IMG/VR virus record: IMGVR_UViG_3300013005_000001
Location: 62,001-126,000 of that record
Reading direction: 5' to 3' (one strand)
Length of the DNA: 64,000 nucleotides
Of this stretch, positions 2,327-29,888 are shown piece after piece. The translations under genes were made by a program, and so were the position numbers. The notes beneath the pieces are model-generated. The model worked only from the letters and a program-made list of their open reading frames with translations. It was not told the origin of the DNA and searched no databases. Positions within the stretch are counted from its first letter, which is position 1, and the number at the start of each line of letters is the position of its first letter.

Positions 2327-3337
2327 TTAATCTCTCCACAGCCATTCAGGATGAGCCTTAGTCCACTCAACTGTAAGCTCTAAAGATCTCTCCAGTGCCA
2401 TTGGAGCAACCCATCCAGCATCAGCAAGCTTCTTTCCGTCAAGGGCATAGCGTAGGTCATGTCCCGGTCTTGTGGTATGGAAGTCCTCGAATATAAAATT
2501 CAATTCCTTGCCCCAGTACTTAGCTACAAGCTGAGCCATCTCAAGGTTATTAATCTCTTTCTCGCCCACAATATGATACTTATCTGGTCGATCTGAGTTT
2601 GGATAATGTGTAGCAGGTAGATTCTTTAGAATAAAGACGAGAGCATCTGCTTGATTTCTTGCGTGTAAATAAAAGCGTGAACCAATATTATCTGGAGTGC
2701 CATGGATTGTCATTGGTACATCTTTTTCAAGACAGTACATGATCTTTGGAATAAACTTCTCAGGATCCTGACGCTCACCAATAATATTCATGGTGTTAGT
2801 TATGACTACTGGAACGTCAAACGTTCTCCAATATGAGATACAAGCAGCTTCCTGTGCAGCTTTAGAGCCTGAGTATGGATTAGATGGCAGGATAGTGTCC
2901 CATTCCTTGTGGGCATATCCCTTGGGAGCAGGACCATAAACCTCATCTGTTGAGACATGTAGAAATACTTCTGGCTTAATCTTGCGTGCAAGCTCTAGCA
3001 TGTTAACGACCAATGCTACATTGTTCATGATGAATGGTGCTGGGTCTGTAATAGATCTATCTACGTGTGAATCAGATGCCATAGAAATAATATAATCAAT
3101 ATGACCCATGTCTTTAATCATTACATCAGAAAATGGAACAGTAAGATCATGAGTAATTAATTTAACTCTGTGCTTGTTTTCTTCCCAAGATTTAATGGAG
3201 GTAATTCTATCTGTTACTCCACGATGACGGAATGAATCGCTAATGACGACATCCCAGTCTGTTGTTTTAAAAATATGTTCTAGAGTGTGGTGTCCTACGA
3301 AACCACCTGCTCCTGTTAAAAATACTCTTTTATTCAC
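2327..3337 (-). CDS. rmlB: dTDP-glucose 4,6-dehydratase-like NAD-dependent epimerase/dehydratase
   Basis: GAGGFVG Rossmann motif, ASDSHVDRSI, STDEVYG, YSGSK (YxxxK), RPGHDLRY. Confidence 0.9.
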   Translation of the reverse strand: MNKRVFLTGAGGFVGHHTLEHIFKTTDWDVVISDSFRHRGVTDRITSIKSWEENKHRVKLITHDLTVPFSDVMIKDMGHIDYIISMASDSHVDRSITDPAPFIMNNVALVVNMLELARKIKPEVFLHVSTDEVYGPAPKGYAHKEWDTILPSNPYSGSKAAQEAACISYWRTFDVPVVITNTMNIIGERQDPEKFIPKIMYCLEKDVPMTIHGTPDNIGSRFYLHARNQADALVFILKNLPATHYPNSDRPDKYHIVGEKEINNLEMAQLVAKYWGKELNFIFEDFHTTRPGHDLRYALDGKKLADAGWVAPMALERSLELTVEWTKAHPEWLWRD

Positions 3338-7904: not shown

Positions 7905-8354
7905 TCAAGATAGATCGTGGTTATGTGGAAAGTCCCATATTTCTTTAGAAGAAGGATTAATTCTCTTATTGTACTTATCTTGAATAGATCTTTTTCTTAA
8001 AGAAATAAGCTTATGAATAGGAGCATGCAAAGAAGGCCAATGTGTACTAAGGCTATCCATAACTTTAGTAAAAGCAATATCAGCACTAGTATAATTAGGA
8101 TCTATAGCTTTAGTTGCAAGAGCTTTATAAATATAATAAAGCTGTTCTTTTTCAGCAGGGGTTAAACTAAACCAACCTTCAGTATCTTTAGATGCATACG
8201 AAGAAGTAATGGTAACAGAACCAGTATAAGGATTAGAGGTTGTTGTCTGAGGAGCAGGTTTAGGGATAATAGTTTTTCTACTATCAGCAAGTTTGCTTAT
8301 AGAATTAGCTAAGTTATTTATAGCGTTAACTAAAGATTTCATATTTTTCTCCAT
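7905..8354 (-). CDS. hypothetical protein
   Basis: ORF track, packed operon. Confidence 0.6.
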   Translation of the reverse strand: MEKNMKSLVNAINNLANSISKLADSRKTIIPKPAPQTTTSNPYTGSVTITSSYASKDTEGWFSLTPAEKEQLYYIYKALATKAIDPNYTSADIAFTKVMDSLSTHWPSLHAPIHKLISLRKRSIQDKYNKRINPSSKEIWDFPHNHDLS

Positions 8355-8362
8355 TAAATTAA

Positions 8363-8572
8363 TCAGGTGTAACCGCGAGCTAAAGCATTTTCTAGTCTAT
8401 GGATTTCTTGCTCACGATGAAGAGCAATTAATTTCCATTCATCAAGATCCATTTGAAGAATCTCAATTTTGGCAACAGCGCATTCAGGGCATTTAGTGAC
8501 CCAGGCTAAAAGGTCTTCTTTACTTTGGCTCATAGGGTTTTCTCCACATAGAAGGAGAGTGTGCACTCTCAA
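8363..8572 (-). CDS. hypothetical protein
   Basis: ORF track; true start probably internal (MSQSKE). Confidence 0.5.
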   Translation of the reverse strand: MRVHTLLLCGENPMSQSKEDLLAWVTKCPECAVAKIEILQMDLDEWKLIALHREQEIHRLENALARGYT

Positions 8573-8750
8573 CGTTTAGTTTATGCTCCGTGTCCTCGTA
8601 AAGACGAATCATATGCATACAAGGATCTGATCCTTCAGCAAATTGATTATCTTCTTCTTCGGTCATAGGAAAGCTGTCATGAGTATAGCATACAGCTGGT
8701 CCACACCAATTGTTATCTAAGCCTATTCTAATCCATTCGTCAAAATTCAT
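8520..8750 (-). CDS. phage hypothetical protein
   Basis: W..CGPAVC.THD...DPCMHMIRLYE pattern typical of small phage proteins. Confidence 0.65.
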   Translation of the reverse strand: MNFDEWIRIGLDNNWCGPAVCYTHDSFPMTEEEDNQFAEGSDPCMHMIRLYEDTEHKLNVESAHSPSMWRKPYEPK

Positions 8751-8754
8751 AATA

Positions 8755-9189
8755 TTAAAACGAATCGTCTAAATCAACAGTAGGAATTGACTGTTGCTTA
8801 GGAAAAGGAATTTGACCTTTTGGATTATAATTCAATTGTTGTTGAGATTGGTCAATAAACTGTTCTTGAAAGCCTTGTTGAATAACAGCTAATTCGCTCA
8901 TGTTTTCTAAACTGTCTACGGCAAAACCTATTTGAATGTTTTTATATTTTAATTGATTATGATTAATAAATTTAGCTAAATCATCAAGAGCAGCTTTTAA
9001 TTCATTTTTAATTTTAGGGTCTAAATTACTTTCAACAATAAACTTTTGTTTTGAGGTAATGAAATTTTCAAAATCAGTGTCGTTAGTGATAGAAGAATCT
9101 TGAGTAGATTGAGTAATTTTGACAGCATTAGAGCTTTCATTTTTTGATACCTTTAAATTTTGTGGCATAGGCCAAATGGAACTAATCAT
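8755..9189 (-). CDS. hypothetical protein with acidic C-terminal tail (DLDDSF)
   Basis: ORF track. Confidence 0.6.
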   Translation of the reverse strand: MISSIWPMPQNLKVSKNESSNAVKITQSTQDSSITNDTDFENFITSKQKFIVESNLDPKIKNELKAALDDLAKFINHNQLKYKNIQIGFAVDSLENMSELAVIQQGFQEQFIDQSQQQLNYNPKGQIPFPKQQSIPTVDLDDSF

Positions 9190-9196
9190 TAAAATA

Positions 9197-9505
9197 TTAA
9201 ACTCTTTCTAGAGGGAAAACTTTTTTAAGTCTTTTTTGACACTTGTGTGTTGGCTCATCGTTTATGCCAACGCATACTTTAACAGTTACTTGGCAAGAAC
9301 GGCACAACCATTTTGTGTTAGGAGGGTATTTAGTTTTAGCACGACGGGGTTCTGGAGACAAAGGAATATCTTCTATCGGATCTTCTTCTAGAACTTCTAC
9401 AGACTTAATAATACAGTCTGGGCAGACTTTAGGTTTTCTTCCTCTAGTTTTCTGACGGTTCCATTCGATGCCACATGAAGCGCATGTAAGTTTATCAAAA
9501 TCCAT
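9197..9505 (-). CDS. multi-CxxC zinc-ribbon protein
   Basis: CASC, CPDC, CRSC, HKC motifs. Confidence 0.65.
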   Translation of the reverse strand: MDFDKLTCASCGIEWNRQKTRGRKPKVCPDCIIKSVEVLEEDPIEDIPLSPEPRRAKTKYPPNTKWLCRSCQVTVKVCVGINDEPTHKCQKRLKKVFPLERV

Positions 9506-9517
9506 TATTATTCCGTT

Positions 9518-10129
9518 CTATGTCTCTTCCTGTACATAACAATAGTAAGGGGGACCAGTGTGAGGATCAAATTTTGCAGAAACGGCAATAGCTTTAAGAC
9601 ACAGGCTTTTAGCTTGAGGGATGTTAGGAATGCCCTTTTTAGGAAACAGTATAGACATAGCCCCCAAAGCATAAGAAGCGCCTGTACCGAGCGCATAGAG
9701 GCCACTCACGTCAGATGTCCAGGAGTAATCACCATCTACAACATAGATGGAGCCATTTATTGAACAAATCACCGTAGACCCTTGCTCAGCTATATGGCTT
9801 GATTCATCTCTTTCTGGTGCAGCATAACCTTGAACTTCAAATGTAGCTCTTAGAGATGGTATGAACTTACTAGTAAAAAACTGGTCCAACTTAGAATCTG
9901 TTATGCCCGGTGGTGGTATTGGTGGTTGAAAAACATGATGCAGGATATTTATAGCCCTAACATCTCCAGCAGCACCTAAAAGATATCTACCATTAATAGC
10001 AACTTTAGAAGAATTTTTACCTAAAGTAGTTATTTGAGAAGCGAAACCGCCATCGTCCATAGAGGATATTCTAGAATCTGCACAAATGATACTGAAACCG
10101 TCACCTTGAACTCCAATTATTGTAGTCAT
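9518..10129 (-). CDS. proteasome beta-subunit/HslV-like Ntn threonine protease
   Basis: N-terminal (M)TTIIG nucleophile, ADSR, SSKV, GAAGDV, ALGTG, DPHTG. Confidence 0.85.
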   Translation of the reverse strand: MTTIIGVQGDGFSIICADSRISSMDDGGFASQITTLGKNSSKVAINGRYLLGAAGDVRAINILHHVFQPPIPPPGITDSKLDQFFTSKFIPSLRATFEVQGYAAPERDESSHIAEQGSTVICSINGSIYVVDGDYSWTSDVSGLYALGTGASYALGAMSILFPKKGIPNIPQAKSLCLKAIAVSAKFDPHTGPPYYCYVQEET

Positions 10130-10327
10130 ATAAATCCTTGTTTATAAATACGGGCAAAAGGATTATACTACATATCTTGAACAAAAACAATTTAAATAGA
10201 GTCTTGTTTAGGATTATAATATAAAGAACCAAATACTTTTAAAGCTATTTCTTTAATTTGCCTAGGATCTTTAGTCTGATAGGAATAGTATTTTTGCTGT
10301 TTTTGATAAGTTTTACTTTTGTTTTTT

Positions 10328-10579
10328 CTACGTTTGGACAACTGTAACACCCTCTTTGTACAGGCACAGAGAAGGGTAAGTATCTCTTATGTCTGTATTG
10401 AAAAATTTACCAGAAGAAGAAGAAGTTATAAAGTTCTGATAAATAGTTTCAGGAATTTGGCGATAAAGCCAAACTGCTCTTGATCGAAAAATAACGATAA
10501 GATCTTTTGTCTCAGTATTCCAAGAAGCAGCGTGTAAAACGCTACTATCTTTAAAGTTGTGTAGTCTAAATGTCTCCAT
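10328..10579 (-). CDS. KTSC-domain protein
   Basis: SSVL...WN..TKDLIVIF....Y..IP...Y..F..SSS.GKFFN..IRD.Y. Confidence 0.85.
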   Translation of the reverse strand: METFRLHNFKDSSVLHAASWNTETKDLIVIFRSRAVWLYRQIPETIYQNFITSSSSGKFFNTDIRDTYPSLCLYKEGVTVVQT

Positions 10580-10604
10580 AATACTTTCCGTATAATATGT
10601 GTAG

Positions 10605-10676
10605 CGCCTCCACTAGGAATCGAACCTAGAACGGGGGATTAGAAGTCCCATGTTATATCCATTTAACTACAGAGGC
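10605..10676 (-). tRNA. tRNA-Arg(TCT)
   Basis: GCCTCTG acceptor, CT-TCT-AA loop, GGTTCGATTCC T arm. Confidence 0.9.
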
Positions 10677-10696
10677 ATTAGACAATTATATCACCG

Positions 10697-11122
10697 CTAC
10701 GGGTATCCATAATTGCTATGAGTGTTAGAGTCTATAAATAGTTTAACTTGAAGAATAGTTTTGTCTTCTCTAACAACATAAACAAATCCATTAGTCCAAC
10801 ATGAACCTTCAACAATATAACCAGGGTCAGGGTCAGTAGGATCTACTAGGCCACATTTTAAATTGTCTAATAACTTAAATCTAAAAGAATTTAATGGAAC
10901 TGCACTCCAATATGAATCATTAAGAATATCTTCAGGAAAAGGAATCTTTCCATGAAAGTTCATAAAATTATTTGCTAAAGAAACAACAAGTTCATGAGAT
11001 AGTTCCTTAGAGTCGTATACTAACCATTCTTTATAGAACTGGTAAAATATTAAAAACTCATAAGAATCTTCTTCAAAAAAAGAAGAATCTAAAGACTGCA
11101 GTGCTTCTATAGAAATAGCCAT
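10697..11122 (-). CDS. hypothetical protein
   Basis: ORF track. Confidence 0.6.
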   Translation of the reverse strand: MAISIEALQSLDSSFFEEDSYEFLIFYQFYKEWLVYDSKELSHELVVSLANNFMNFHGKIPFPEDILNDSYWSAVPLNSFRFKLLDNLKCGLVDPTDPDPGYIVEGSCWTNGFVYVVREDKTILQVKLFIDSNTHSNYGYP

Positions 11123-11123
11123 A

Positions 11124-11504
11124 TTATTTATTTTTCAATAACAACTTAACATAAAGGGTTCTTCTTTCAATATTAGAAAGAAACTTTACGGCTGTCATTC
11201 TCCAGTTGTTTTGTTTATTAACATAATCTAAAACTTCAGATTCTGAATATTGTGAATTGTTTTTTCTTAGATTGTTTTTGTGCATTTCAACTTTAGTTTT
11301 TTGGCACGATAATTGAAGTTCAATTTCTCTTCTAACCAATTGAAGGCTGTAGTGCCAAAGTTCAAGGTGAGAGTGAAGATAAGATTTAACTTCATCAGAA
11401 GTTTCAGGAGATTTAATGTCGCTGGCAACGACCTCTTGAAACTTGGACATCTCTTTGTCTGATATAGAATCTATAGTTCTATCATTCAGGTATATGAGCT
11501 CCAT
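11124..11504 (-). CDS. hypothetical helical protein
   Basis: ORF track. Confidence 0.6.
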   Translation of the reverse strand: MELIYLNDRTIDSISDKEMSKFQEVVASDIKSPETSDEVKSYLHSHLELWHYSLQLVRREIELQLSCQKTKVEMHKNNLRKNNSQYSESEVLDYVNKQNNWRMTAVKFLSNIERRTLYVKLLLKNK

Positions 11505-12240
11505 TTTTGTTGCCTTTCTTATATATAAATTGGTACACTTGTAAGATATCTTCCTTAAAGGAAGCTTGAGCAGATTCTCCAGATTTTAAAACATAATTTA
11601 GAGAATACAATGGGTAAATTGGCCAACTACCTAGCCAATTAAGTTTTTGTTTATAATCTTTCATTTTGACATCAGTGCCAAAAAGATTAGATAAAACAGT
11701 ATTTCCTATTGGACATATAATTTTAGGATTCATAATATGAATCTCATTATGAAGATATGGCAAACAGTTGTCTATATACTTTTGATCTACTTCTCTAGTA
11801 GGGCATCTTAACAGATATGTTAAACAAGCTTTATCGGAAGAAAAGCCTACTTCTTTTAAAGAAGATATAAAGAAATCAGAAGAAGCCTGATCTAAATAAG
11901 AAGTTTCAAAAATAAATAAAACGTCAGGGTTATTAACATTCCATTTTGGTAGAACTGGAGTAGAAGAGAATTGACACTTCCTACAATTGTGAGTAACCGT
12001 ATGCAGGTCTGTAATCTTTAAAGAATTTTTTAAAGAATTAGAAGAAACTCTTGCCTCTTTGATAATGTCAGCAACATCTGCATTTGGCAATTTTTTATCA
12101 ATTGCCGAGAATATATTAGAAACTATATCTGTCTCCATAAAGCCGAGTTGACCATAAGATCTTTCGACTGATGGAGATTCAGATAAAGCTTCGTTTATAA
12201 TTTCTTCTACTAAGGAAGCGTCAAATGAATTAGAACTCAT
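11482..12240 (-). CDS. family-4 uracil-DNA glycosylase-like protein with degenerate catalytic motifs
   Basis: CRKC, LRCP, CLPYL..EI...PKII.PIG; start reassigned to the ATG at 12240. Confidence 0.75.
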   Translation of the reverse strand: MSSNSFDASLVEEIINEALSESPSVERSYGQLGFMETDIVSNIFSAIDKKLPNADVADIIKEARVSSNSLKNSLKITDLHTVTHNCRKCQFSSTPVLPKWNVNNPDVLFIFETSYLDQASSDFFISSLKEVGFSSDKACLTYLLRCPTREVDQKYIDNCLPYLHNEIHIMNPKIICPIGNTVLSNLFGTDVKMKDYKQKLNWLGSWPIYPLYSLNYVLKSGESAQASFKEDILQVYQFIYKKGNKNGAHIPE

Positions 12241-12682
12241 CCGGAACAGAGTTAGCAGAACCACCCTGTTTAGCTTGACTGCTTGTAGCGGTTGCAGTGT
12301 CAGACTTCTGGAAAGAAGAACCAACATAAGTTAAAGCTTCTGCAACAATAACAATCTTTGAACGAGCTGAACCTTCTTGCTGCCAACGCTCTTGAACTAA
12401 GCGTCCAACAAGCTGAACTTGTGAACCCTTTTTCATTTTGCCTTCGCTAAGTTGTTTAGAAACAAATGAAGCATTCTTAGTTGCAAAATCTGTTCCATCT
12501 TTAAGATAGTATGTAACATCAAAGTATCCTGAGGTTACGCCTGCACCTTTTTCGCTGCCTGCAAAATCAACGGCAATTCTGAACTTAGCGATATTGCCAT
12601 TAGCAATTACTTCAGGGTCAGACACAATGCCTGCGGTTAATATTACGTTGTTACGTGGATCTATCATTTCTATTGTCTCCAA
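12230..12682 (-). CDS. ssb: single-stranded DNA-binding protein
   Basis: OB-fold pattern FRIAVD...YFDV...KGSQVQLVGRL.QERW; acidic PDEF tail. Confidence 0.85.
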   Translation of the reverse strand: METIEMIDPRNNVILTAGIVSDPEVIANGNIAKFRIAVDFAGSEKGAGVTSGYFDVTYYLKDGTDFATKNASFVSKQLSEGKMKKGSQVQLVGRLVQERWQQEGSARSKIVIVAEALTYVGSSFQKSDTATATSSQAKQGGSANSVPDEF

Positions 12683-12931
12683 TTATTCTTTGTTTAATGT
12701 ATCTTTAAATGTATTAGATATTTGATCTAAAAATCCAGTAGAAATCTTAACAGCTTCTACTGAACCATATTCTACCATAAGGTAGTTCAAAAGATTAAGA
12801 TATAAATTATATATTCCCATCTTAAGATCTGTAACCACATCAGTGGTAGTGCCTTCGGGAATATCCTCAAGGAGTTTAAACCCTTCGGCATATTCTTGTT
12901 CTTGCTGGTCTTTATTATCTTCTGTTGACAT
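12683..12931 (-). CDS. hypothetical acidic protein
   Basis: ORF track. Confidence 0.6.
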   Translation of the reverse strand: MSTEDNKDQQEQEYAEGFKLLEDIPEGTTTDVVTDLKMGIYNLYLNLLNYLMVEYGSVEAVKISTGFLDQISNTFKDTLNKE

Positions 12932-13229
12932 TAGTAGTCACCCTATTCGATAAAGCTTCGTCAATTATCTGACCAAGATATTTAGTATCTTTGTAACCTT
13001 TGTCATACAAAACAGATATAATTGGCTTTGGATCAACGTGATTATAAGTTACCAGTTGAAGATTTAAAACATCGTTTATAGTATAAATTCTATAATTATT
13101 TAAATCTCTTCTAGGATTGGGATACTTCTTGTTTTTTTCTCGGTTAGCAATAGTCAATGTGGAAACATTGAGAATTTTAGCTACTTCAGATCTATTAAAA
13201 GAAGGCTGAGATGATTTGTTTTTACTCAT
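12915..13229 (-). CDS. MerR-type helix-turn-helix DNA-binding protein
   Basis: SEVAKILNVSTLTI..RE...Y..PRRD.NNYRIYT..DV. Confidence 0.85.
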   Translation of the reverse strand: MSKNKSSQPSFNRSEVAKILNVSTLTIANREKNKKYPNPRRDLNNYRIYTINDVLNLQLVTYNHVDPKPIISVLYDKGYKDTKYLGQIIDEALSNRVTTNVNRR

Positions 13230-16938: not shown

Positions 16939-17216
16939 TAAGTCTCCGTAAGTATAGATTCAAAAGATAAGGTATTATTTTGTAATGAATCAAGAAGTGG
17001 CAAAGATGACAAATGCAACGAATGTATTTCGTCATGCACTTGTTTTGCAATTGGATATATTTTGTGTAAAAAATAAAAATTGTTTAATATATTAAAGTTT
17101 TCAGATTCTACAAATAAAACAGAAACGTTATTGATCGGTTCCGTCAGATAACTTTTCGTCAGCCAGGCTCTCAATGGCTGAGGCAACTCCTGGACTTTCT
17201 GCAGCCAATAGACCAC
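16938..17216 (-). CDS. hypothetical protein, start uncertain
   Basis: Fills the gap in the operon; no clear RBS. Confidence 0.3.
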   Translation of the reverse strand: MVYWLQKVQELPQPLRAWLTKSYLTEPINNVSVLFVESENFNILNNFYFLHKIYPIAKQVHDEIHSLHLSSLPLLDSLQNNTLSFESILTET

Positions 17217-17517
17217 CGGCTCCTTCTTTCATGGCTTCAAGCATTTGTTTTCTGCTTTGAGCTATAGTGTCCATAAATATTTTTTGAGATTCAGGAGAAG
17301 CAAATTTAATTTGGGCTATAAGGCCTTCCATATTAACTGCTTGCTCACCAAAACCAAGAATTAAAGTAGCAATCTGCTTTTCTAAGTTCTCGATAGACTC
17401 ATCAAATTCTTTAAATCTTTCATCTATTTTAGCAGACATAGATATAATAAGTTGCTGAGTTTGTTCTCTAAGCAAATCTATATCGTTTATTCCTTCAAAT
17501 AATGAATCATCTGACAT
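17128..17517 (-). CDS. hypothetical coiled-coil protein
   Basis: ORF track, translational coupling. Confidence 0.65.
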   Translation of the reverse strand: MSDDSLFEGINDIDLLREQTQQLIISMSAKIDERFKEFDESIENLEKQIATLILGFGEQAVNMEGLIAQIKFASPESQKIFMDTIAQSRKQMLEAMKEGAGGLLAAESPGVASAIESLADEKLSDGTDQ

Positions 17518-18134
17518 TACGCATCATACCATTCTGTGTTGTTGGTAACGTGAGAAACCAAAGAAAGATCTAGTAAATAAGAAATACTTACAACATCTTG
17601 ACGAGTTACTTTAATAGAGTCAACAGATAAAGGTGATTTCATATCAGGTATGAATGCACCACTGTCAGACTTGCGAGCTTTAAAATGACCGGCTTTCCAG
17701 ATGAATGCAGAAGTATCTACATTGTCACCTGATTGCCAATACTGGCATTTAAAGATTCTACTAATTGATTGACCAGCAGCAGTCATTGTTCCACCGTAAG
17801 AAACATATGCTTCAGGTGTAGCAAGGCCAAGTCGCTCATTGGCAGGAAAGTTAAGAGCAGCAGTTCCATTAGTTATTGCTTTAAGATAGGCTGCAAAGTC
17901 AATGGCATCAACAAAACAATTAGTGTTACTTTCAAGTTTTCCAGAAGCATTGGTCTTGCCAATGTCAATGGAGAATTTCATACCTTGAAACCAAGGTCGA
18001 ATAGAAACAAAACCACTTTGAGATTTAGATTTAAACCACTTTTTATAAAGTGTGTTAGTGTATTTTGGTTTATCATCTTGGTTATCAGAATCTAGTGATT
18101 CTAAAAACTCTTCTACATTTTCTTCAATTGACAT
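17517..18134 (-). CDS. hypothetical beta-rich protein directly downstream of the AAA ATPase
   Basis: GAGG RBS, 205 aa. Confidence 0.7.
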   Translation of the reverse strand: MSIEENVEEFLESLDSDNQDDKPKYTNTLYKKWFKSKSQSGFVSIRPWFQGMKFSIDIGKTNASGKLESNTNCFVDAIDFAAYLKAITNGTAALNFPANERLGLATPEAYVSYGGTMTAAGQSISRIFKCQYWQSGDNVDTSAFIWKAGHFKARKSDSGAFIPDMKSPLSVDSIKVTRQDVVSISYLLDLSLVSHVTNNTEWYDA

Positions 18135-18156
18135 AATTACCTCTTGTTTAAGATTG

Positions 18157-19755
18157 TTAAACTTTCAAGTCCCATGAAGGGGCTTGAGAAGATTTTTGTT
18201 TACCAAGTATATCATCTATATCATTGTACTGGAAGCTAGAAGCCCAGTCCCAGTTTTCATAAGCATAGCGATATAAGTCTTTAATCATTTCGCGTTCTTT
18301 ATTCCAAAGAATATTGCGCATAAATGGAGCAGCTTTTACTACGTCAGCAGTATTTAGCATGCGGTGTTCAGCAGAAACAACATTAAATTTTGTTTCTTTA
18401 ACAAGTGATTTAATTTCTGCACCAGTAAAATACTTAGTTGCATGAGCTATAGCAGAATAATCATACGTATCTTCAGGAAGATAAATCTTAATAATTTCAA
18501 TTCGTTCTTCAAATGATGGCAAGCCAACAAAGAAGATCTTATCGAATCGTTCTGCACGAAGCATTTCTGGCTTAAGATGATTAAGCTGGTTAGCAGCACA
18601 CATTAAGAATACGTCATTAGGAAGTTCTTGAAGACCAGTAAGAAATTCGCCATGAACACGATCGGTAGTGCCACCGTCTACTTGAGATGAGCTTTGACCA
18701 CCAGACATGTCTCGACCGAACTCGTCAATCCAAACACAAAGAGGAGCCATGACTTTAATCTGTTGAAAGACTGTACGCATGTTTTGTTCTGATTGACCAA
18801 TGAAGGAATTCATTACTTGACTTACACCAGTTCGAGCAAGATCAAGACCAAGTGCACTAGCAGTTGCTTCACAAATAGCAGATTTACCAGTGCCCGGAAT
18901 ACCAACAGTTAGCATGCGACGAATAGGCTGAATGCCAAACTTCTGAGCTTCTTGAGGATTATTCCAAAAATAAAGATTGCGCATAATAACATCTTTAATA
19001 TTATCAAGGCCACCAATTTGATCAAAAGTAATCTTAGGTTTGATTATTTCAAGAATTCCATTTTTCTTAACATTAGCCATTTTAGCTTCGTAAATATAAG
19101 AAGAGCTAATTGTCCCATGCTCAAGAACTGACATAAGACAGAGGTTGATGAACTTAGATTCTGTAAGGCCAAGTCCAGCATTAGAAATTTCTTTAGCCTT
19201 AGCAGCATCTAACACTTCGCCATTAGTTGAAGTGTGTATGTGATTAAGAATTTCGTTTAGTTCTTGAAGAGTAGGGTACATATCTTCATGAACATAAAAT
19301 AGATGAGCAATTTCCTCTGGAACATCAGATGCGCTCAACACTATTAGCTGAAGTGGCATCAGAGAAATGTCATCAGATTTAAAAGATTTTCTGTAGTCAG
19401 AATGAAGAGAAGAAACTAAACCTGAGAATTCGTTAGCAAATGCTTTGGGGTCTCCAATTAAATTGTAAATAAAAGACTTAGGAAGATCTTTAACATCAGG
19501 AGAATTAAACATGTAATCAAATGATAATGAAAGATCTGTAGTTGTTTTCACCATGGGTGGAGCGCCTTCTTCAGGCGCAGGTATAGAAACAAGAACTGGT
19601 TTCCACTGAAAGTTTACGTTTTGAGAAAATCCATCTTTTGAAATCGTAAAATAAGTACGCTTATCAAAAGATATAATGTTTTCTTCAAGTCTGTAGGGGT
19701 CGGTTGTTTTAATCCATATGGCAGGAATGCCAAGTTGAATTTGCTGAAAGAGCAT
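18157..19755 (-). CDS. AAA+ ATPase (Ycf46/Cdc48-like, with degenerate N-terminal AAA module)
   Basis: Walker A GIPGTGKS, Walker B CVWIDE, sensor-1 AAN, Arg finger LRAERFD; GGAG RBS before ATG 19755. Confidence 0.9.
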   Translation of the reverse strand: MLFQQIQLGIPAIWIKTTDPYRLEENIISFDKRTYFTISKDGFSQNVNFQWKPVLVSIPAPEEGAPPMVKTTTDLSLSFDYMFNSPDVKDLPKSFIYNLIGDPKAFANEFSGLVSSLHSDYRKSFKSDDISLMPLQLIVLSASDVPEEIAHLFYVHEDMYPTLQELNEILNHIHTSTNGEVLDAAKAKEISNAGLGLTESKFINLCLMSVLEHGTISSSYIYEAKMANVKKNGILEIIKPKITFDQIGGLDNIKDVIMRNLYFWNNPQEAQKFGIQPIRRMLTVGIPGTGKSAICEATASALGLDLARTGVSQVMNSFIGQSEQNMRTVFQQIKVMAPLCVWIDEFGRDMSGGQSSSQVDGGTTDRVHGEFLTGLQELPNDVFLMCAANQLNHLKPEMLRAERFDKIFFVGLPSFEERIEIIKIYLPEDTYDYSAIAHATKYFTGAEIKSLVKETKFNVVSAEHRMLNTADVVKAAPFMRNILWNKEREMIKDLYRYAYENWDWASSFQYNDIDDILGKQKSSQAPSWDLKV

Positions 19756-19795
19756 GTGTACTCCGAATATCAAAATAATAATCTAAGGGCTTTAT

Positions 19796-19865
19796 AAAAA
19801 ATGATGGGGGGGACCACTCTATTAAGAGTTTAATAAACTATCAAGTAGTTTAATAGCCCCCCCCA
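19796..19865 (-). terminator. branched G7/C8-closed hairpin plus U tract between the Ubl and AAA genes
   Basis: G run 19806-19812 pairs with C run 19857-19864, two internal hairpins, followed by a T5 tract on the minus strand. Confidence 0.55.
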
Positions 19866-19885
19866 CGATCATAGTAGGAAAGGTA

Positions 19886-20137
19886 TTAGCCCTTTTCGCC
19901 TGCACGGCGATGGAACTCAACGTTGTCGTTTGGCTGAATGACATAGTTCTCGTCGAGCTTGTCTTTACCCTTGTAAGCAATAGCGTCTGAGCTAATGCCC
20001 CAGAGCTTGCTGAACTGCTCACGAACTTGTCCAACAGTCTTTCCTGAGACTGGTGCTGGCTGATTGTATACACCGTAACGAACGTTGGCTACGCCTTCGC
20101 TTGAGCTGGTGCTTGTTTGGTTGGAATTCATTTCCAT
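19886..20137 (-). CDS. ubiquitin-like (beta-grasp) modifier protein
   Basis: 83 aa, GKTVGQVR...AY.G...DENYVIQPND.VEF, C-terminal RRAGEKG, adjacent to E1. Confidence 0.85.
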   Translation of the reverse strand: MEMNSNQTSTSSSEGVANVRYGVYNQPAPVSGKTVGQVREQFSKLWGISSDAIAYKGKDKLDENYVIQPNDNVEFHRRAGEKG

Positions 20138-20158
20138 GTTATTATCTCCGTTTATTAG

Positions 20159-20908
20159 TTATAGGTAAGCGGGTTGCTGTTGATTAACCATACGATTGTA
20201 TGGCTGGGACATGCCAAGACCTAAATCAAAGTAGATCTCTGACTGTTCTGGATTTTGTTCGGAAACAATAGTATATTGAATACGACCAAGAATCATTGCA
20301 GCAACAGCCATGTTGGTGGCAAGTATTTGTGTACCACCTTCTACTTCGGCTCGTTCTTGACAAGACATTTCACCTGGATTGCGATCAGGTGGATTTTGGT
20401 ATTCTGGGTGTGTTTCTACCGGATGAGCAGTAACGTCTACGCCATCGCGACGACGATAATGATAGATGCTACCAAAAAGGTTATCATCATTTCCACCAGT
20501 AAAAACATCTACGTTGTTAAGCTTTGAAGCTGCGTCAAATAAAATTTTACGAGCAGCAAAGTTGTCAACAACAGCAAGAACAATATCGCCTTCAGTAATT
20601 AACTGAGTAGCTCTGATCTTGCTAGATTCTTCATCTGTTTCAGGATGTTCATCTGAAACAACCCACTTAGGAATAGGTATAACAAGAGTCTGATTAAACT
20701 GCTTAGTTAGCTCAAGAGCTTTAACTGAAGCCTTGTTTCCTACTTGAGTAAATGATTGACGCTCTAAGTTTCTTTGCTCATAACTGTCACCATCAACAAT
20801 TATTAAAGCAGATCCAGGATATTTCCATTCAAGAAGTCTTACGACTCCTTCTGCTAACCAGGTGCCAATGCCACCGGCACCAACTAGAACTACTCTTTTG
20901 GGGTCCAT
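20159..20908 (-). CDS. ThiF/E1-like Ubl-activating enzyme
   Basis: VGAGGIG, VDGD..E.RNL.RQ, VDNFAAR, PGEMSC putative catalytic Cys. Confidence 0.9.
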   Translation of the reverse strand: MDPKRVVLVGAGGIGTWLAEGVVRLLEWKYPGSALIIVDGDSYEQRNLERQSFTQVGNKASVKALELTKQFNQTLVIPIPKWVVSDEHPETDEESSKIRATQLITEGDIVLAVVDNFAARKILFDAASKLNNVDVFTGGNDDNLFGSIYHYRRRDGVDVTAHPVETHPEYQNPPDRNPGEMSCQERAEVEGGTQILATNMAVAAMILGRIQYTIVSEQNPEQSEIYFDLGLGMSQPYNRMVNQQQPAYL

Positions 20909-20918
20909 AAATTATTCC

Positions 20919-22571
20919 TTAATCGTAATAAGCCAAGCTATTAGTATGCTCATAAGCAACATAATCTTGACATTGAGTAATAGGGTTTTCAATTTTTCTT
21001 TTACTTATAGCAAAATCAAGAATTGAAGTTAAATAAGGTTTGCAATTGCGAGAATAATAAAATTCACAATCAACGCAACTTGACTGATTATCATACACGT
21101 TGTATGGATGAGTGTGATCAAATTCAATTACATCATCATAATATACAGTCTTCTCACAGGTGCATTGTTCAATTAAAGATAAAGGAATGTCACAGCAAAC
21201 TGTTCTAGTCTGATCAAATCCTTCATAGAAATAATCATCAAGAACTTCTACAGTTGTTCCTTCGTTACTAGAAAGTAATGAAGTATGCAAAGAACTGTCA
21301 TCATCGTTATAATCAACTTCTTTAATTCGCATAAGCAAATCTTGATCTTTGCCATCTTTAGTCCAAAGGTAATAAGTTACATTAGGATCTAAATTTCTGT
21401 CAGTTAAATACTTTTTAGCGTTATCGATTATCTCAGCATAAGAATCTGATATAAGAGCAAAGCACAAATCGCAAGTGTCACAATAGAAATTCTTTGCGTA
21501 ATAAGCAAGTACTTCAGTTTGACATGATGGGCATTCAGATCCAGCAGAATCTACTTCACCTATAACGAGATATGGTTCATCGTCTTTTGGATCTGGATAC
21601 TCTTGAAGTCGAGGATCTCCGTTACGAATACCAGGATGAGTAGAGGCCTGCGGAAGACTCTGTGCCTGCGTTGTAGCCTGCGTTGTAGACGCCTGCGCCA
21701 CCCGAGTAACCGAACCCCCCGCTATAGGGGGGAGTGCTTTTTTTACTTTAGAAGTCCATTCTACTACTTGAGGATCGGGTTCTTTAAGAAAAATATAATC
21801 TTCAAATACATCTTCTGGCTTAAGGGTATAAGTATGACCGGCCATTTGCATTTCAATATGATATTGAGTTGCGCCATTATTGACAGATTTTTGCCATCCA
21901 TAAGTAATATGGATACCATCAAAATCAGCTTGGTCTGCATGATCTGTGCCAGATGCATATGCAGCCATATCGGGATGGCTATGAACAGAACCAACAATTA
22001 AAACATCTTCTGGTTTTTGATCTACGATACTGTCCGCATCGTACTTACAGTGAACAGAAGTGTTTACTTGGTCTGGAACAAGAACGCCCCAGCCTTGAGA
22101 AGTGCCTTCATACTGAGGATCAAATGTCAAAAGAACAATTGACTCAGTGCCGTGCTGAGCATGAACCAATCTAAAGAACTCGTCTAGCTTGTCAATAATA
22201 ACACGAGGAATGGCAGGAAGACTGTATTCAGCTGTTTCACGAGTAACGTCAAAGTCAAAGAGGTCTTCGTCAACTATTTCAGAAACAGTTCTTCCAACAA
22301 AGTTGTTAACAACCTTAACAATCTTAGTAGAAAGATCAGTTACGTAAGAAACATTCTTAGTTGTAATGCCCTTATCGTAAACGTTTGTTTCAACTTTGCG
22401 GTCAGTAGCAACATTGCAAATTAGATAATAAATATTGAAACCAAGAAATTCAATTTCTTCTTCAATGTTATCTCTGTTTGCCATAAAGCATGGGACTCCG
22501 GATTTAGTCCAGAAGTAATTTAAGTCTTCTAACTTAACATCCATATAAGTAATATTATCTATTTGGTCCAT
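20919..22571 (-). CDS. JAB/MPN+ (JAMM) isopeptidase with C-terminal Cys-rich zinc-binding regions
   Basis: TESIVLL...GSVHSHPDMAAYASGTD (E-HxH-x7-S-x2-D); CPSC/CDTC and further Cys clusters. Confidence 0.88.
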   Translation of the reverse strand: MDQIDNITYMDVKLEDLNYFWTKSGVPCFMANRDNIEEEIEFLGFNIYYLICNVATDRKVETNVYDKGITTKNVSYVTDLSTKIVKVVNNFVGRTVSEIVDEDLFDFDVTRETAEYSLPAIPRVIIDKLDEFFRLVHAQHGTESIVLLTFDPQYEGTSQGWGVLVPDQVNTSVHCKYDADSIVDQKPEDVLIVGSVHSHPDMAAYASGTDHADQADFDGIHITYGWQKSVNNGATQYHIEMQMAGHTYTLKPEDVFEDYIFLKEPDPQVVEWTSKVKKALPPIAGGSVTRVAQASTTQATTQAQSLPQASTHPGIRNGDPRLQEYPDPKDDEPYLVIGEVDSAGSECPSCQTEVLAYYAKNFYCDTCDLCFALISDSYAEIIDNAKKYLTDRNLDPNVTYYLWTKDGKDQDLLMRIKEVDYNDDDSSLHTSLLSSNEGTTVEVLDDYFYEGFDQTRTVCCDIPLSLIEQCTCEKTVYYDDVIEFDHTHPYNVYDNQSSCVDCEFYYSRNCKPYLTSILDFAISKRKIENPITQCQDYVAYEHTNSLAYYD

Positions 22572-22603
22572 AAAATCTCCAGATTTAGGGTTTCTTTATT
22601 TTG

Positions 22604-24472
22604 TTAAAAAGGGTCAGTGAAAGATTGATTGTTAGCTTGTAAAAAGTTTTGATGTTTTTTAATTCCAACAGATTTGGATAAAGTGTGTACAGATTGCTGA
22701 ATAGCAACTTGAACATACTGTTCTTGGAATGGCTGATAATAAGCTACCATTTCTCCTTCAGGAGATTCTGTAACATTACCAAGGCATTCTGCACAACACT
22801 GAGTTACAGTAAGAGAAGTGTCTTCAGGTAAAATAGTGGGAGTACAAGGTCCAAATTGAGAATTATTATTCTTCAACAATCCGCAAGGGCAAGTAAAATG
22901 CTGAGCATTGCATGATTGACAAAGGGTAATAACTTTAGGAGCTAAGATTAAATCAGGTGAAACAACCATGGCCTTAGACTGAGGATAACTTTCTTGCCAA
23001 CCATTAGTTTCAATAGCAACAGCTGCACATACATAACAGTTAGTAGGAGTTAATTCATTATCTGCTATATAACCAGGTTGGCAGTTAGAACATACCACTT
23101 CTTCAGATTCAGGAATGTGTAGAAGTTGTTTAGCTAAAGCAGTTTTTGCATTTTCAGAATTTCCTATAACGCCTATCCAACTTGAGCAAATATGGCATTC
23201 TGCTACAGTATCATGTTGGGTATGATAGTATTCACAGTCTGATTCAGAAAAAACTATATTAGGATCTTCGTTATTATAGTATTTATCAACAGACTCAATA
23301 AAAGAGTAATGATCATTTATGCATGAGTTGCATACATCATTGCCGTAAGCATCGCAAATTGGTTCTTCATCGCTCATATGATGAATGTCTTCACAGCATG
23401 AGCAAACCCAATCGTTTTCATTATCTTCGTCTTGAGAAAATAAGTTTGGCTGGATTAAAACTGCAGAACCGTTTTTCTCTCTGTTAGCAACAGTAAAATC
23501 ATAAGGGTTATCTTTAGCAGTATGAGTATAATTTACTGGAGAAGAAGCAAAAGCTTTTTTAAACATATCAGCAATGTTTAGATCGGTAAAAGATAAATCA
23601 GGACGAGATACAATATTATACATCTTAGGAATGTTAGTATCAGAATAGTATGCTTGGTAGTTACCTAACATAGCCATAGCAAGAGTTAGCTCTTGTCCGT
23701 TGTAATCATGTTGAGCTTGATTATCCATGTCTTTAACTTTAACAGGGATCCAAAGGTTTTCATCTAGAGTCCAATTAAAACCTTCTTCATCAGACTTTTG
23801 CTGCCAAAGCTTTGGATTTGTAATATATTCAGGCTTTCCGTTAGCAGCATAAAAACGAGGACCATCAGTCTCTGACATGTTGGCATCATTATAAGTCTCT
23901 ACTCCTGAGCAGCGCTCAATGAAACGAGAAACTTTTTCATTAAAAGGAAAAGAAGACCAATCATCTTTATGATACAAGCAAATCCAACCTACGGCATTGC
24001 CTCGATAGCCTTTGCAGTTAATGTTAGGAAGGTTAACGTGATAAAGAACGTTATTAGGAGAAGTGATTGGATATGGAGAATAAAACATTTTAGCACCTAG
24101 AAGGTTGCCGTTTTCAAAGTCTCCAATAACAATGCGATAGGGCTGAGCTACATAGTAAGTTTTAGCGTGTATATCGCCCTCGTGAGAGCCCCAGTTGAGG
24201 TGATACATGCCGGGGGCGTGTTGGGTCACAACTTGGGTATGAGGACCCGCAGAACGGATTGCAAGCACTCCTGTGCCATTCAAGGGAAGTAAGCCTGTAT
24301 CAAAGGATGCAAACTGAGAAAAGTTACTGTAAAAAGATACGATATCTTTATCAGTTACATGGTCTAAGTTAAAAGATTTAACAGAAGACCGGACGGCATA
24401 AGTGCCTTGATCGTTTTTAACGAGAGAGTAGTTATATGAGTCAGTCATTGTATTTTCCATTCGCAATGTCAT
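22604..24472 (-). CDS. prokaryotic E2 family D-like protein (paralog 1) with C-terminal CxxC repeats
   Basis: YVAQPYRIVIG...KMFYSPYP...LYHVNLPNIN...GWICL; roughly ten CxxC-type pairs after residue 350. Confidence 0.75.
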   Translation of the reverse strand: MTLRMENTMTDSYNYSLVKNDQGTYAVRSSVKSFNLDHVTDKDIVSFYSNFSQFASFDTGLLPLNGTGVLAIRSAGPHTQVVTQHAPGMYHLNWGSHEGDIHAKTYYVAQPYRIVIGDFENGNLLGAKMFYSPYPITSPNNVLYHVNLPNINCKGYRGNAVGWICLYHKDDWSSFPFNEKVSRFIERCSGVETYNDANMSETDGPRFYAANGKPEYITNPKLWQQKSDEEGFNWTLDENLWIPVKVKDMDNQAQHDYNGQELTLAMAMLGNYQAYYSDTNIPKMYNIVSRPDLSFTDLNIADMFKKAFASSPVNYTHTAKDNPYDFTVANREKNGSAVLIQPNLFSQDEDNENDWVCSCCEDIHHMSDEEPICDAYGNDVCNSCINDHYSFIESVDKYYNNEDPNIVFSESDCEYYHTQHDTVAECHICSSWIGVIGNSENAKTALAKQLLHIPESEEVVCSNCQPGYIADNELTPTNCYVCAAVAIETNGWQESYPQSKAMVVSPDLILAPKVITLCQSCNAQHFTCPCGLLKNNNSQFGPCTPTILPEDTSLTVTQCCAECLGNVTESPEGEMVAYYQPFQEQYVQVAIQQSVHTLSKSVGIKKHQNFLQANNQSFTDPF

Positions 24473-29600: not shown

Positions 29601-29888
29601 TCATATTCCATCTTTGTTGATAGTTCTTCTAGGCTTTCTTTTAGCATTACCATAAGGTAAATAGCCAAGAGATACACGTTGTTCTTCTGTTTCGCCACCC
29701 CATATGCCATATTCAAGATTGTTGCGAGCATAAGCTCTACATTGAGTGACTACTGGACATTGGGCGCAAATAGTTAAAGCTTTTGCTTCTCGTTTTACTC
29801 TAGCTTGAGGGCGTTCGTTATAAAGCGGAAAGAATAAATCAGTTTGATTTTTACATGCCGCTGCATCGAACCATGAAGGGTGATACAT
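29601..29888 (-). CDS. whiB: WhiB-family Fe-S transcriptional regulator
   Basis: AAC...LFFP...ICAQCPV...C...GIWGG. Confidence 0.93.
   Translation of the reverse strand: MYHPSWFDAAACKNQTDLFFPLYNERPQARVKREAKALTICAQCPVVTQCRAYARNNLEYGIWGGETEEQRVSLGYLPYGNAKRKPRRTINKDGI

What the first reader, a model, noticed from the sequence alone, without database searches (positions are those of the whole stretch)
9518..10129. Viral proteasome-beta/HslV-like protease
Seen: Thr at position 2 exposed after Met removal, plus K, GxG and DxxTG motifs. Known: such Ntn proteases form self-compartmentalised rings, and phage-borne ones are not unprecedented on their own. Inference: partner of the AAA ATPase 8 kb upstream in the same transcriptional block, or a modulator of the host 20S proteasome.
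Basis: partly seen in the sequence, partly recalled or inferred. Interest (0 to 1): 0.6.

Follow-up and report, generated by a model that had tools for sequence, protein, structure and literature searches.

The report
Phage proteasome-like threonine peptidase gene
A 210-kb lake phage that probably infects actinobacteria carries a real, strongly conserved proteasome/HslV/BPH-type peptidase gene, but this kind of phage gene is already catalogued and nothing ties it to the AAA ATPase 8 kb away.

Summary

Phage genes of this kind are known (PHROG 1040; Fuchs et al. 2021), so this is a new member of a known kind. The clade is common in lake phages: 471 IMG/VR stretches.

The proposed ATPase partnership is not supported:
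- Four near-complete genomes of an unrelated phage lineage and phage DSL-LC01 carry the peptidase without that ATPase.
- Two 92%-complete jumbo relatives carry the ATPase cassette without the peptidase; in one, an unrelated ORF fills the slot.
- The gene has its own conserved promoter.

The host-20S idea could not be tested.

The ATPase belongs to a conserved cassette with JAB, E1-like and ubiquitin-like genes. A phage-borne tagging-to-degradation pathway therefore remains a low-probability reading.

The parts
9518..10129 (-). Coding sequence (203 aa plus stop) of the proteasome-like N-terminal-threonine peptidase. Catalytic set: T2, D18, K42, T149 in G-T-G, D188, T191.
10135..10139 (-). Shine-Dalgarno-like AAGGA, 5 nt upstream of the ATG.
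   Evidence: Read from the sequence; A/G-rich at the same place in 8 of 10 relatives
10162..10167 (-). -10 box TATAAT of the gene's own promoter. T-A-T-A-x-T is invariant in 10 jumbo-phage relatives whose flanks are otherwise diverged.
   Evidence: Alignment A2; sequence. The motif is not repeated in the window above chance.
10185..10190 (-). -35-like TTGTTT, 17 nt upstream of the -10 box.
   Evidence: Read from the sequence; 'TTGT(T/A)TTT' is present in most relatives. Inferred; the tool's stricter scan did not list it.

Best explanation
The gene encodes an active N-terminal-threonine peptidase of the proteasome superfamily, closest to the compact, propeptide-free bacterial forms BPH and HslV. 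After Met removal, Thr1 is the nucleophile, supported by Asp17, Lys33, Thr129 (in place of Ser), Asp166 and Thr169 (in place of Ser). Subunits are predicted to pack side by side and back to back through helices 151-161 and 179-187, which is how HslV, BPH and 20S beta rings stack, so the active sites would face a closed chamber. In this phage it is transcribed from its own promoter within the long leftward block of early or DNA-metabolism genes. It behaves as a self-sufficient accessory gene that lake actinophages exchange among themselves. It does not depend on a phage-encoded ATPase. Like BPH, it most likely cleaves peptides and unfolded or loosely folded proteins that can enter the chamber unaided, or that a host unfoldase feeds in. 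The likely use is degrading host proteins or recycling amino acids during takeover. Shown: gene, fold, conserved catalytic residues, purifying selection, independence from the ATPase. Predicted: self-assembly. Inferred: peptidase activity, substrates, biological role.
For: Fold and residues; model residue 2 aligns to Thr1 of BPH, PrcB and eukaryotic beta subunits. No propeptide. Self-assembly: ipSAE 0.78 (three runs 0.78-0.81) against 0.00 for the best of 3 controls, runs agreeing in at least 75% of contacts, partner pLDDT at least 81. That mark was reached by 20 of 30 solved homo-pairs and 1 of 23 solved single chains. The counts hold only roughly here because my own alignment and four copies were used, and the pass may reflect memory of solved HslV or proteasome rings. 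Selection: dN/dS 0.04-0.20. Abundance: 791 relatives among the candidates of the word search, 471 IMG/VR stretches, but 1 hit in 185,579 species genomes, a 23-kb MAG contig. Autonomy: it is the only full-length protein shared at high identity (64% and 46%) by three phage lineages that otherwise share only WhiB, an Rpf-like domain and tail or lysin domains. The tree mixes the two lineages. The genomic contexts differ. Group B genomes G004-G007 have no classical AAA over the cut-off, and G003/G004 have no Clp-type ATPase or ClpP. In G010 the slot is filled by another gene. Own promoter. [quoted passage not shown] Fragments identical to the gene occur in four lake metatranscriptome libraries.
Against: No biochemical data exist for any phage homologue in the literature searched. 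HslV on its own is a poor peptidase (general knowledge), so an activator may be needed. The ring size is unknown and the oligomer prediction may be template memory. The RNA evidence comes from low-depth contigs and DNA carry-over is not excluded. The amino-acid-recycling or takeover role is inference only. In this jumbo lineage the gene is always collinear with an AAA ATPase that has a conserved C-terminal tail, so a lineage-specific partnership is not excluded.
Confidence: 0.6

Rival explanations
1. In the jumbo lineage the peptidase is the proteolytic end of a phage-borne tagging pathway. The Ubl (19886-20137) is activated by the E1-like protein (20159-20908) and trimmed or removed by the JAB protein (20919-22571). 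Tagged proteins are unfolded by the Cdc48/PAN-like AAA ATPase (18157-19773), which docks on the peptidase ring through its conserved C-terminal W-x-[LIV]-K-x tail.
For: All five component types of an archaeal SAMP-proteasome-like pathway sit on one strand within 13 kb. The cassette is collinear in 43 of 43 loci. The peptidase lies 8 kb downstream in all 10 close relatives with enough flank and is present in 11 of 17 E1-bearing contigs. The ATPase tail is conserved after a variable linker, which is the architecture of docking tails. The Ubl model gives only ubiquitin-fold matches among its top 50.
Against: The distributions separate both ways. The cassette occurs without the peptidase in G010 and G011 (92% complete) and in the less complete G014 and G016, with a different gene in the slot in G010. 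The peptidase occurs without the cassette in group B and DSL-LC01. The peptidase has its own promoter and about 14 genes lie between. There is no HbYX tail. Collinearity within one lineage carries little information.
Confidence: 0.13
2. The peptidase works with a host unfoldase, such as an actinobacterial ARC/Mpa, Cpa or ClpC1/ClpX-type ATPase, and redirects host ATP-dependent proteolysis.
For: It occurs in phages that encode no AAA+ unfoldase. It is shared only among phages carrying actinobacterial-host markers (WhiB, Rpf-like domain), which fits a host-specific partner. HslV-type rings generally need an activator (general knowledge).
Against: No host genome is identified, so no partner could be examined. 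BPH, one of the closest solved relatives, apparently lacks a partner unfoldase (PMC5777263).
Confidence: 0.15
3. It enters or caps the host 20S proteasome (PrcAB), forming mixed rings or blocking it.
Against: There is no propeptide, whereas the solved actinobacterial PrcB entries include propeptide-bearing forms (entry titles). Sequence identity to PrcB is only 16-19%. Homo-oligomer contacts are predicted confidently. Related peptidases occur in Vibrio, Psychrobacter, Tenacibaculum and Moorella phages, and by general knowledge those host groups do not have a 20S proteasome. It is not known whether the host has PrcAB.
Confidence: 0.04
4. It is a head-morphogenesis or virion-associated protease.
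For: In 56 of 80 related loci (group B) the gene lies just upstream of the portal gene, in the run terminase, endolysin, metallophosphatase, peptidase, small membrane protein, portal, 261-aa protein, capsid. A distant relative sits between a 472-aa protein and the portal gene, overlapping both.
Against: In this genome the gene lies about 75 kb from the terminase-portal-capsid module (G000 140-153 kb), on the other strand, among SSB, UDG and tRNA genes. Cultured-phage relatives sit among early or nucleotide-metabolism genes. The jumbo relatives G010 and G011 do without it.
Confidence: 0.04
5. It is not a protease but another kind of Ntn enzyme, such as a ligase or transpeptidase like connectase, or an amidohydrolase acting on a small molecule.
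For: The proteasome superfamily includes the ligase connectase (PMC8665760). No protein substrate or activator is known.
Against: The full proteasome-type catalytic set is invariant. The best matches are all ring-forming peptidases.
Confidence: 0.04

Closest known systems
BPH (Betaproteobacteria proteasome homologue; PDB 5ovs, 5ovt, 5ovu; PMC5777263)
   Same: Best Foldseek match (E 5e-11, TM 0.70/0.75) and best PDB sequence match (E 0.015, 22-23% identity). About 190-200 aa and a single compact domain with no propeptide. No dedicated unfoldase gene travels with it.
HslV (ClpQ), the peptidase of HslUV
   Same: The same 'MTTI' start, fold and catalytic set. PHROG 1040 and JGI annotations call it HslV.
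   Different: No NCBIfam HslV model matches. No HslU is present: the only AAA_2 protein in the genome resembles the second ATPase domain of ClpC/ClpB. It is about 25 residues longer than the solved HslV chains.
Phage-borne proteasome homologues PPH and AAH of Fuchs, Alva and Lupas 2021 (PMC8665760)
   Same: These are group I proteasome homologues found in tailed phages, spread by phages, and of unknown function.
   Different: PPH is about 140 residues, whereas this protein is 203. Caulobacter-phage proteins of 131-146 aa match with TMq of only about 0.46-0.50. Whether it falls inside AAH could not be tested because no AAH sequence was at hand. The paper found no AAH in phages specific to Actinobacteria, whereas this clade sits in phages with actinobacterial markers.
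20S proteasome beta subunit (archaeal; actinobacterial PrcB)
   Different: No propeptide, no alpha-type paralogue in the genome, and below the Pfam threshold.

Membership tests
Proteasome superfamily (Ntn hydrolases; Pfam PF00227 clan) | Alpha-beta-beta-alpha Ntn fold of a proteasome subunit | tested here: met
Proteasome superfamily (Ntn hydrolases; Pfam PF00227 clan) | N-terminal Thr nucleophile with Asp/Glu17, Lys33, Ser/Thr129, Asp166 and Ser/Thr169 | tested here: met
   T2, D18, K42, G148-T-G150, D188, T191 and G192 are invariant in 30 sequences. Thr2 aligns to Thr1 of solved chains. The GSG and SG motifs align with HslV and BPH.
Proteasome superfamily (Ntn hydrolases; Pfam PF00227 clan) | Score above Pfam's gathering threshold | tested here: not met
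   16.3 bits against 22.4, over residues 2-23 only. Many close relatives do carry a precomputed PF00227 hit.
Proteasome superfamily (Ntn hydrolases; Pfam PF00227 clan) | Self-compartmentalising stacked rings | tested here: inconclusive
   The four-copy prediction passes its controls (0.78 against 0.00) and shows both lateral and helix-helix contacts. Ring closure and symmetry cannot be seen with four copies, and the pass may be memory of solved rings.
Proteasome superfamily (Ntn hydrolases; Pfam PF00227 clan) | Peptidase activity | not testable with these tools
   Needs an enzyme assay.
HslV (of HslUV) | Matches the curated HslV equivalog model | tested here: not met
   No NCBIfam family at E <= 0.001. 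PDB HslV chains score E 0.002-0.03 over the C-terminal third only.
HslV (of HslUV) | Cognate HslU ATPase encoded with it | tested here: not met
   The only AAA_2-family gene in G000 resembles the second ATPase domain of ClpC/ClpB, lies 59 kb away and is on the other strand. None is present in G003, G004 or DSL-LC01.
HslV (of HslUV) | Dodecamer of two hexameric rings | not testable with these tools
   Needs EM, SEC-MALS or a crystal structure.
BPH | Significant sequence membership in the BPH cluster | tested here: inconclusive
   It is the best PDB hit, but only at E 0.015 with a single sequence and E 0.0043 with the profile, at 22-23% identity.
BPH | Tetradecamer with an acidic inner cavity and an elongated pore loop | not tested
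   No coordinates of an assembled ring were available.
PPH / AAH (Fuchs et al. 2021) | PPH: about 140 residues | tested here: not met
   203 aa. Relatives run 200-223 aa in the alignment and 179-223 aa among the listed hits.
PPH / AAH (Fuchs et al. 2021) | AAH: clusters with representative WP_035979212 | not tested
   No tool returns a sequence by accession, and I did not type one from memory.
20S beta subunit able to join host PrcAB | N-terminal propeptide removed on assembly, and an alpha-ring partner | tested here: not met
   Only 4 in-frame codons lie upstream of the ATG. There is no second PF00227-like gene in G000.

The most novel reading that the evidence does not exclude
The jumbo lineage encodes a complete virus-borne analogue of the archaeal or eukaryotic tag-unfold-degrade pathway. 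A Ubl ending in Gly, an E1-like adenylase, a JAMM/MPN+ isopeptidase and a Cdc48/PAN-like AAA unfoldase with a conserved docking tail would together feed this proteasome-like peptidase, so that the phage marks chosen host or phage proteins for destruction.
Probability: 0.12. Interest if true: 0.85.

Novelty: new member of a known kind. Interest (0 to 1): 0.4.

Why it matters
None of the papers my searches turned up assigns a substrate, a quaternary structure or a role to a phage-encoded proteasome homologue, although such genes are widespread. This clade would be a good test case. It is abundant (471 IMG/VR stretches). It is strongly conserved. It is exchanged between unrelated lake phages that carry actinobacterial-host markers. 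It persists in lake samples filed from 2018 to 2024. It also appears to fill a gap noted by Fuchs et al. 2021, who found no such homologue in phages specific to Actinobacteria. If it works without an ATPase it would be a second BPH-like case. If it works with the neighbouring Ubl/E1/JAB/AAA cassette it would be a virus-borne ubiquitin-proteasome analogue.

Tried and rejected
- Nucleotide search of cultured phages: no match.
- PADLOC: no defence-system family for the peptidase.
- NCBIfam: none for the peptidase.
- The profile-against-PDB search was topped by artificial alpha-repeat proteins that match only the 'LGxxGDxRA' stretch. I treated these as spurious.
- The promoter motif TGTAGTATAAT is not repeated in the window above chance, so it gives no temporal class.
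- No intrinsic terminator of note lies on the - strand between the ATPase and the peptidase, so read-through is not excluded.
- Group B structural proteins give no BLASTP hit in G000, so that lineage is unrelated.
- The E1-like and JAB proteins have no PDB sequence match.
- A language-model search with the ATPase N-terminal 235 residues returned only unnamed clusters.
- The downstream neighbours of ATPase homologues in phages JP1 and Corndog were read but not compared further.
- Literature searches for a phage-encoded Ubl-proteasome system or for functional work on phage HslV-like proteins found nothing relevant.
- Not done: a complex prediction of the peptidase with the ATPase, because the single job went to the homo-oligomer; classification against AAH; host identification.

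Full report
**The observation**

The window is bases 62001-126000 of a 210,302-bp IMG/VR virus record with direct terminal repeats. The ORF at 9518-10129 on the - strand encodes 203 residues beginning MTTIIGVQGDGFSIICADSR. It starts at the first possible start codon after a stop. Only four in-frame codons lie upstream (open frame 207 aa), so no propeptide can exist and Thr is exposed once Met is removed. An AAGGA lies 5 nt upstream of the ATG. D18 is also present.

**Is it more than chance?**

- PHROG 1040 'peptidase HslV family' matches at E 5.5e-18.
- Pfam Proteasome is below threshold (16.3 against 22.4 bits, residues 2-23 only). No NCBIfam model matches. By sequence it is a divergent member.
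- The word-index search found 791 relatives among its candidates, many on 170-220-kb contigs.
- In 30 of them (63-91% identical) T2, D18, R20, K42, G55, D56, G148, G150, D188, T191 and G192 are invariant.
- dN/dS against relatives is 0.04-0.20.
- An AlphaFold2 model (pLDDT 81.6, pTM 0.80) matches T. denitrificans BPH best in Foldseek (E 5e-11, TM 0.70/0.75), followed by HslV and 20S beta subunits.
- The fold and reaction centre are therefore established. The subfamily is not, although the highest sequence identity (22-23%) is to BPH.

**Assembly**

Four copies folded together scored ipSAE 0.78 (three runs, 0.78-0.81) against 0.00 for the best of three controls. The runs agreed in at least 75% of contacts and the partner pLDDT was at least 81. 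That mark was reached by 20 of 30 solved homo-pairs and by 1 of 23 solved single chains. These counts hold only roughly here, because my own alignment and four copies were used.

Two contact types appear:
- A lateral one, between residues 78-94 and 132-142 on one subunit and 20-40, 56-66 and 100-102 on the next.
- A symmetric helix-helix one, through 151-161 and 179-187.

Together these fit in-ring and ring-to-ring packing. The pass may reflect the model's memory of solved HslV or proteasome rings, and it says nothing about six-fold against seven-fold symmetry.

**What is already known**

Phage-borne proteasome homologues are catalogued:
- PHROG 1040.
- 41 BFVD entries with E <= 1e-3, from Gordonia, Caulobacter, Vibrio, Pseudomonas and Erwinia phages.

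BPH forms tetradecamers, binds epoxomicin and apparently lacks a partner unfoldase (PMC5777263). My literature searches found no functional study of a phage homologue.

The exhaustive profile search counts 3,530 representatives at E <= 1e-3, 744 at <= 1e-10 and 54 at <= 1e-30. The close clade is essentially viral:
- 471 IMG/VR stretches.
- One hit in 185,579 species genomes, on a 23-kb MAG contig.
- The nearest Atlas clusters are mostly Uroviricota.

**Host and ecology**

G000 encodes a WhiB protein and an Rpf-type transglycosylase domain (window 42488-43363). Both point to an actinobacterial host; WhiB is described as exclusive to actinobacteria and their phages (PMC10611076), and the Rpf link is general knowledge. 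The closest named relative of the peptidase (46% identity) is in Actinomycetia phage DSL-LC01 from Dishui Lake (PMC10611076).

The 5-kb stretch around the gene is held almost complete (79-99% of sampled words) by 14 lake-water DNA runs filed from 2018 to 2024. Eight of these may be the source of this DNA. It is held in part by six lake metatranscriptome runs. Low-depth RNA-library contigs identical to the window touch the gene, for example 9835-10259 in X15. Contigs cannot show strand or level, and DNA carry-over is not excluded.

**Genomic context and the ATPase**

The ATPase at 18157-19773 (538 aa) has one classical AAA domain closest to the second ATPase domain of Cdc48/VAT and to PAN. It lies 8.0 kb upstream on the same strand, with about 14 ORFs and tRNA-Arg in between.

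The peptidase has its own promoter-like site. A TATAAT at 10162-10167 is invariant (T-A-T-A-x-T) in ten jumbo relatives whose flanks are otherwise diverged. A TTGTTT lies 17 nt upstream of it.

Eighty related loci fall into two contexts that never overlap:
- Group A: 24 loci from jumbo phages, with the same synteny as the window.
- Group B: 56 loci from roughly 97-kb phages. There the gene lies in the run large terminase, VanY endolysin, metallophosphatase, peptidase, small membrane protein, SPP1-type portal, 261-aa protein, capsid.

Group B structural proteins have no BLASTP match in G000. Between G000, a complete group B genome (G005) and DSL-LC01, the peptidase is the only protein shared full-length at high identity (64% and 46%). 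The other shared items are WhiB, the Rpf-like domain and tail or lysin domains. The peptidase tree mixes the A and B labels: at least two changes are needed, and no bootstrap tree has just one. The gene has therefore moved between lineages.

**Double dissociation**

The peptidase occurs without the ATPase:
- G003, G004 and DSL-LC01 have no homologue of the ATPase.
- No classical AAA domain scores over the cut-off in G004, G005, G006 or G007, which are 99-100% complete.
- G003 and G004 also lack an AAA_2-type ATPase and ClpP.
- DSL-LC01 has only an unrelated AAA of about 340 aa next to a gene annotated 'cobalamin biosynthesis protein'.

The ATPase occurs without the peptidase:
- The ATPase sits in a seven-gene cassette: a 622-aa protein, JAB, E1-like, Ubl, AAA, a 205-aa protein and a 129-aa protein. 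The cassette is collinear in 43 of 43 loci found through the E1-like gene.
- The peptidase is missing from 6 of 17 of those contigs, including G010 and G011 at 92% completeness.
- In G010 the slot between the conserved 54-aa ORF and the zinc-ribbon gene holds an unrelated 121-aa ORF.

Among cultured phages, none of the 60 listed records (of 72) with an ATPase homologue is among the 20 records with a peptidase homologue. The two genes are therefore not obligate partners.

What remains in favour of a lineage-specific link:
- The cassette's composition.
- A conserved ATPase C-terminus, W-x-[LIV]-K-x, after a variable linker. The JP1 and Corndog homologues lack it. It is not an HbYX motif.

**The cassette (seen in passing)**

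- The protein at 20919-22571 has a complete JAMM motif, H-S-H-P-x7-S-x2-D (PF14464; sequence).
- The protein at 20159-20908 is ThiF/E1-like (PF00899, E 1.5e-13), with GxGxxG, NLERQ and DNFxxR motifs and weak matches to CBASS E1-E2 models.
- The ORF at 19886-20137 encodes 83 residues ending EFHRRAGEKG. It is 83-95% identical across relatives. Its model (pLDDT 67) returns only ubiquitin-fold proteins among its top 50 matches, although the best E-value is just 6.5e-3.

With the AAA ATPase and the peptidase, these make up every component type of an archaeal sampylation-proteasome pathway. I rate the probability that they work as one pathway at about 0.12, because of the double dissociation.

**Other contexts**

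Distant relatives sit among early or nucleotide-metabolism genes. They lie next to ribonucleotide reductase in Methanobacterium virus PhiF1, Vibrio phage 166E36-1 and a metagenomic contig, and among small early genes in Psychrobacter and Arthrobacter phages. One sits between a 472-aa protein and the portal gene.

In G000 the terminase-portal-capsid module is at 140-153 kb on the other strand. A head-maturation role is therefore unlikely in this genome.

**Host 20S**

This idea could not be tested because the host is unknown. Several points argue against co-assembly with PrcAB:
- There is no propeptide.
- Identity to PrcB is 16-19%.
- Self-contacts are predicted with confidence.
- Relatives occur in Vibrio, Psychrobacter, Tenacibaculum and Moorella phages, host groups that by general knowledge lack a 20S proteasome.

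**Verdict**

- The family assignment is correct at superfamily level. The protein is not a bona fide HslV.
- The ATPase partnership is not supported, and the host-20S idea is untested and unlikely.
- The most likely reading is a BPH-like, propeptide-free, ring-forming threonine peptidase that lake actinophages carry and exchange as a self-sufficient accessory gene. It would act on peptides or unfolded proteins during infection. Its substrates and purpose are inferred, not shown.
- Novelty: a new member of a known kind. Interest: 0.4.

Noticed in passing
window 17128-24472 (- strand): A conserved seven-gene cassette: a 622-aa Cys-rich protein (22604-24472), a JAMM/MPN+ protein (20919-22571), a ThiF/E1-like protein (20159-20908), an 83-aa ubiquitin-like protein ending in Gly (19886-20137), a Cdc48/PAN-like AAA ATPase (18157-19773), a 205-aa protein and a 129-aa protein. 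It is collinear in 43 of 43 related IMG/VR loci. A phage-borne Ubl-conjugation module joined to an unfoldase may deserve its own study.
   Followed up: partly
window 18157-18200 (C-terminus of the AAA ATPase): The ATPase ends in a conserved W-x-[LIV]-K-x after a variable linker of about 10 residues. That layout is typical of docking tails, but it is not an HbYX motif. The tail is absent from the homologues in phages JP1 and Corndog.
   Followed up: partly
outside the window: G000 131091-132260 (+), locus L087:5091-6260: A 389-aa single-domain AAA_2 ATPase that resembles the second ATPase domain of ClpC/ClpB (PF07724, E 1.2e-53; ClpC, E 1.7e-77). It contains a 'GGAGF' loop that may be a ClpP-docking loop. 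The phage encodes no ClpP.
   Followed up: partly
window 29601-29888 (-) and 42488-43363 (-): A WhiB-family regulator and a protein with an Rpf-type transglycosylase domain plus an SLT domain. Both mark an actinobacterial host, and both are shared with the unrelated phages G005 and DSL-LC01.
   Followed up: partly
loci L012, L014, L018 and 53 others (group B): In an unrelated lineage of roughly 97-kb phages, the same peptidase (59-67% identical) lies between a metallophosphatase gene and the SPP1-type portal gene, inside the terminase-to-capsid run.
   Followed up: partly
L165:2722-3087 (G010): In a 92%-complete jumbo relative, the peptidase slot between the conserved small ORF and the zinc-ribbon gene holds an unrelated 121-aa ORF. 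The slot is a variable cargo site.
   Followed up: yes
window 10192-10350 (-) and 9197-9505 (-): Two conserved genes flank the peptidase. One is a 52-aa ORF with the motif 'IAxKVFGSxYY'. The other is a 102-aa protein with two CxxC pairs that looks like a zinc ribbon. Both functions are unknown.
   Followed up: no
IMGVR_UViG_3300042868_009074 (G001, 267,766 bp; loci L011, L047, L131, L153): This contig carries two diverged copies of the whole block (two peptidases, two ATPases, two E1-like genes) and is about 57 kb longer than its relatives. It may be two related genomes joined in assembly.
   Followed up: no
window 3363-31452: Six tRNA genes on the - strand (Gly-TCC, Arg-TCT, Met-CAT, Lys-TTT, Asn-GTT, Leu-TAA). 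tRNA-Arg lies between the ATPase and the peptidase, at 10604-10676.
   Followed up: no
window 11482-12327, 12230-12682 and 2327-3337 (- strand): A UDG-superfamily protein, an SSB and a nucleotide-sugar epimerase lie in the same leftward block, which fits an early or DNA-metabolism region.
   Followed up: no
window 8000-13000: Fourteen lake-water DNA runs filed from 2018 to 2024 hold 79-99% of the sampled words of this stretch, and six lake metatranscriptome runs hold 29-50%. The phage is persistent, and its sequence turns up in RNA libraries, which may reflect transcription in situ.
   Followed up: partly
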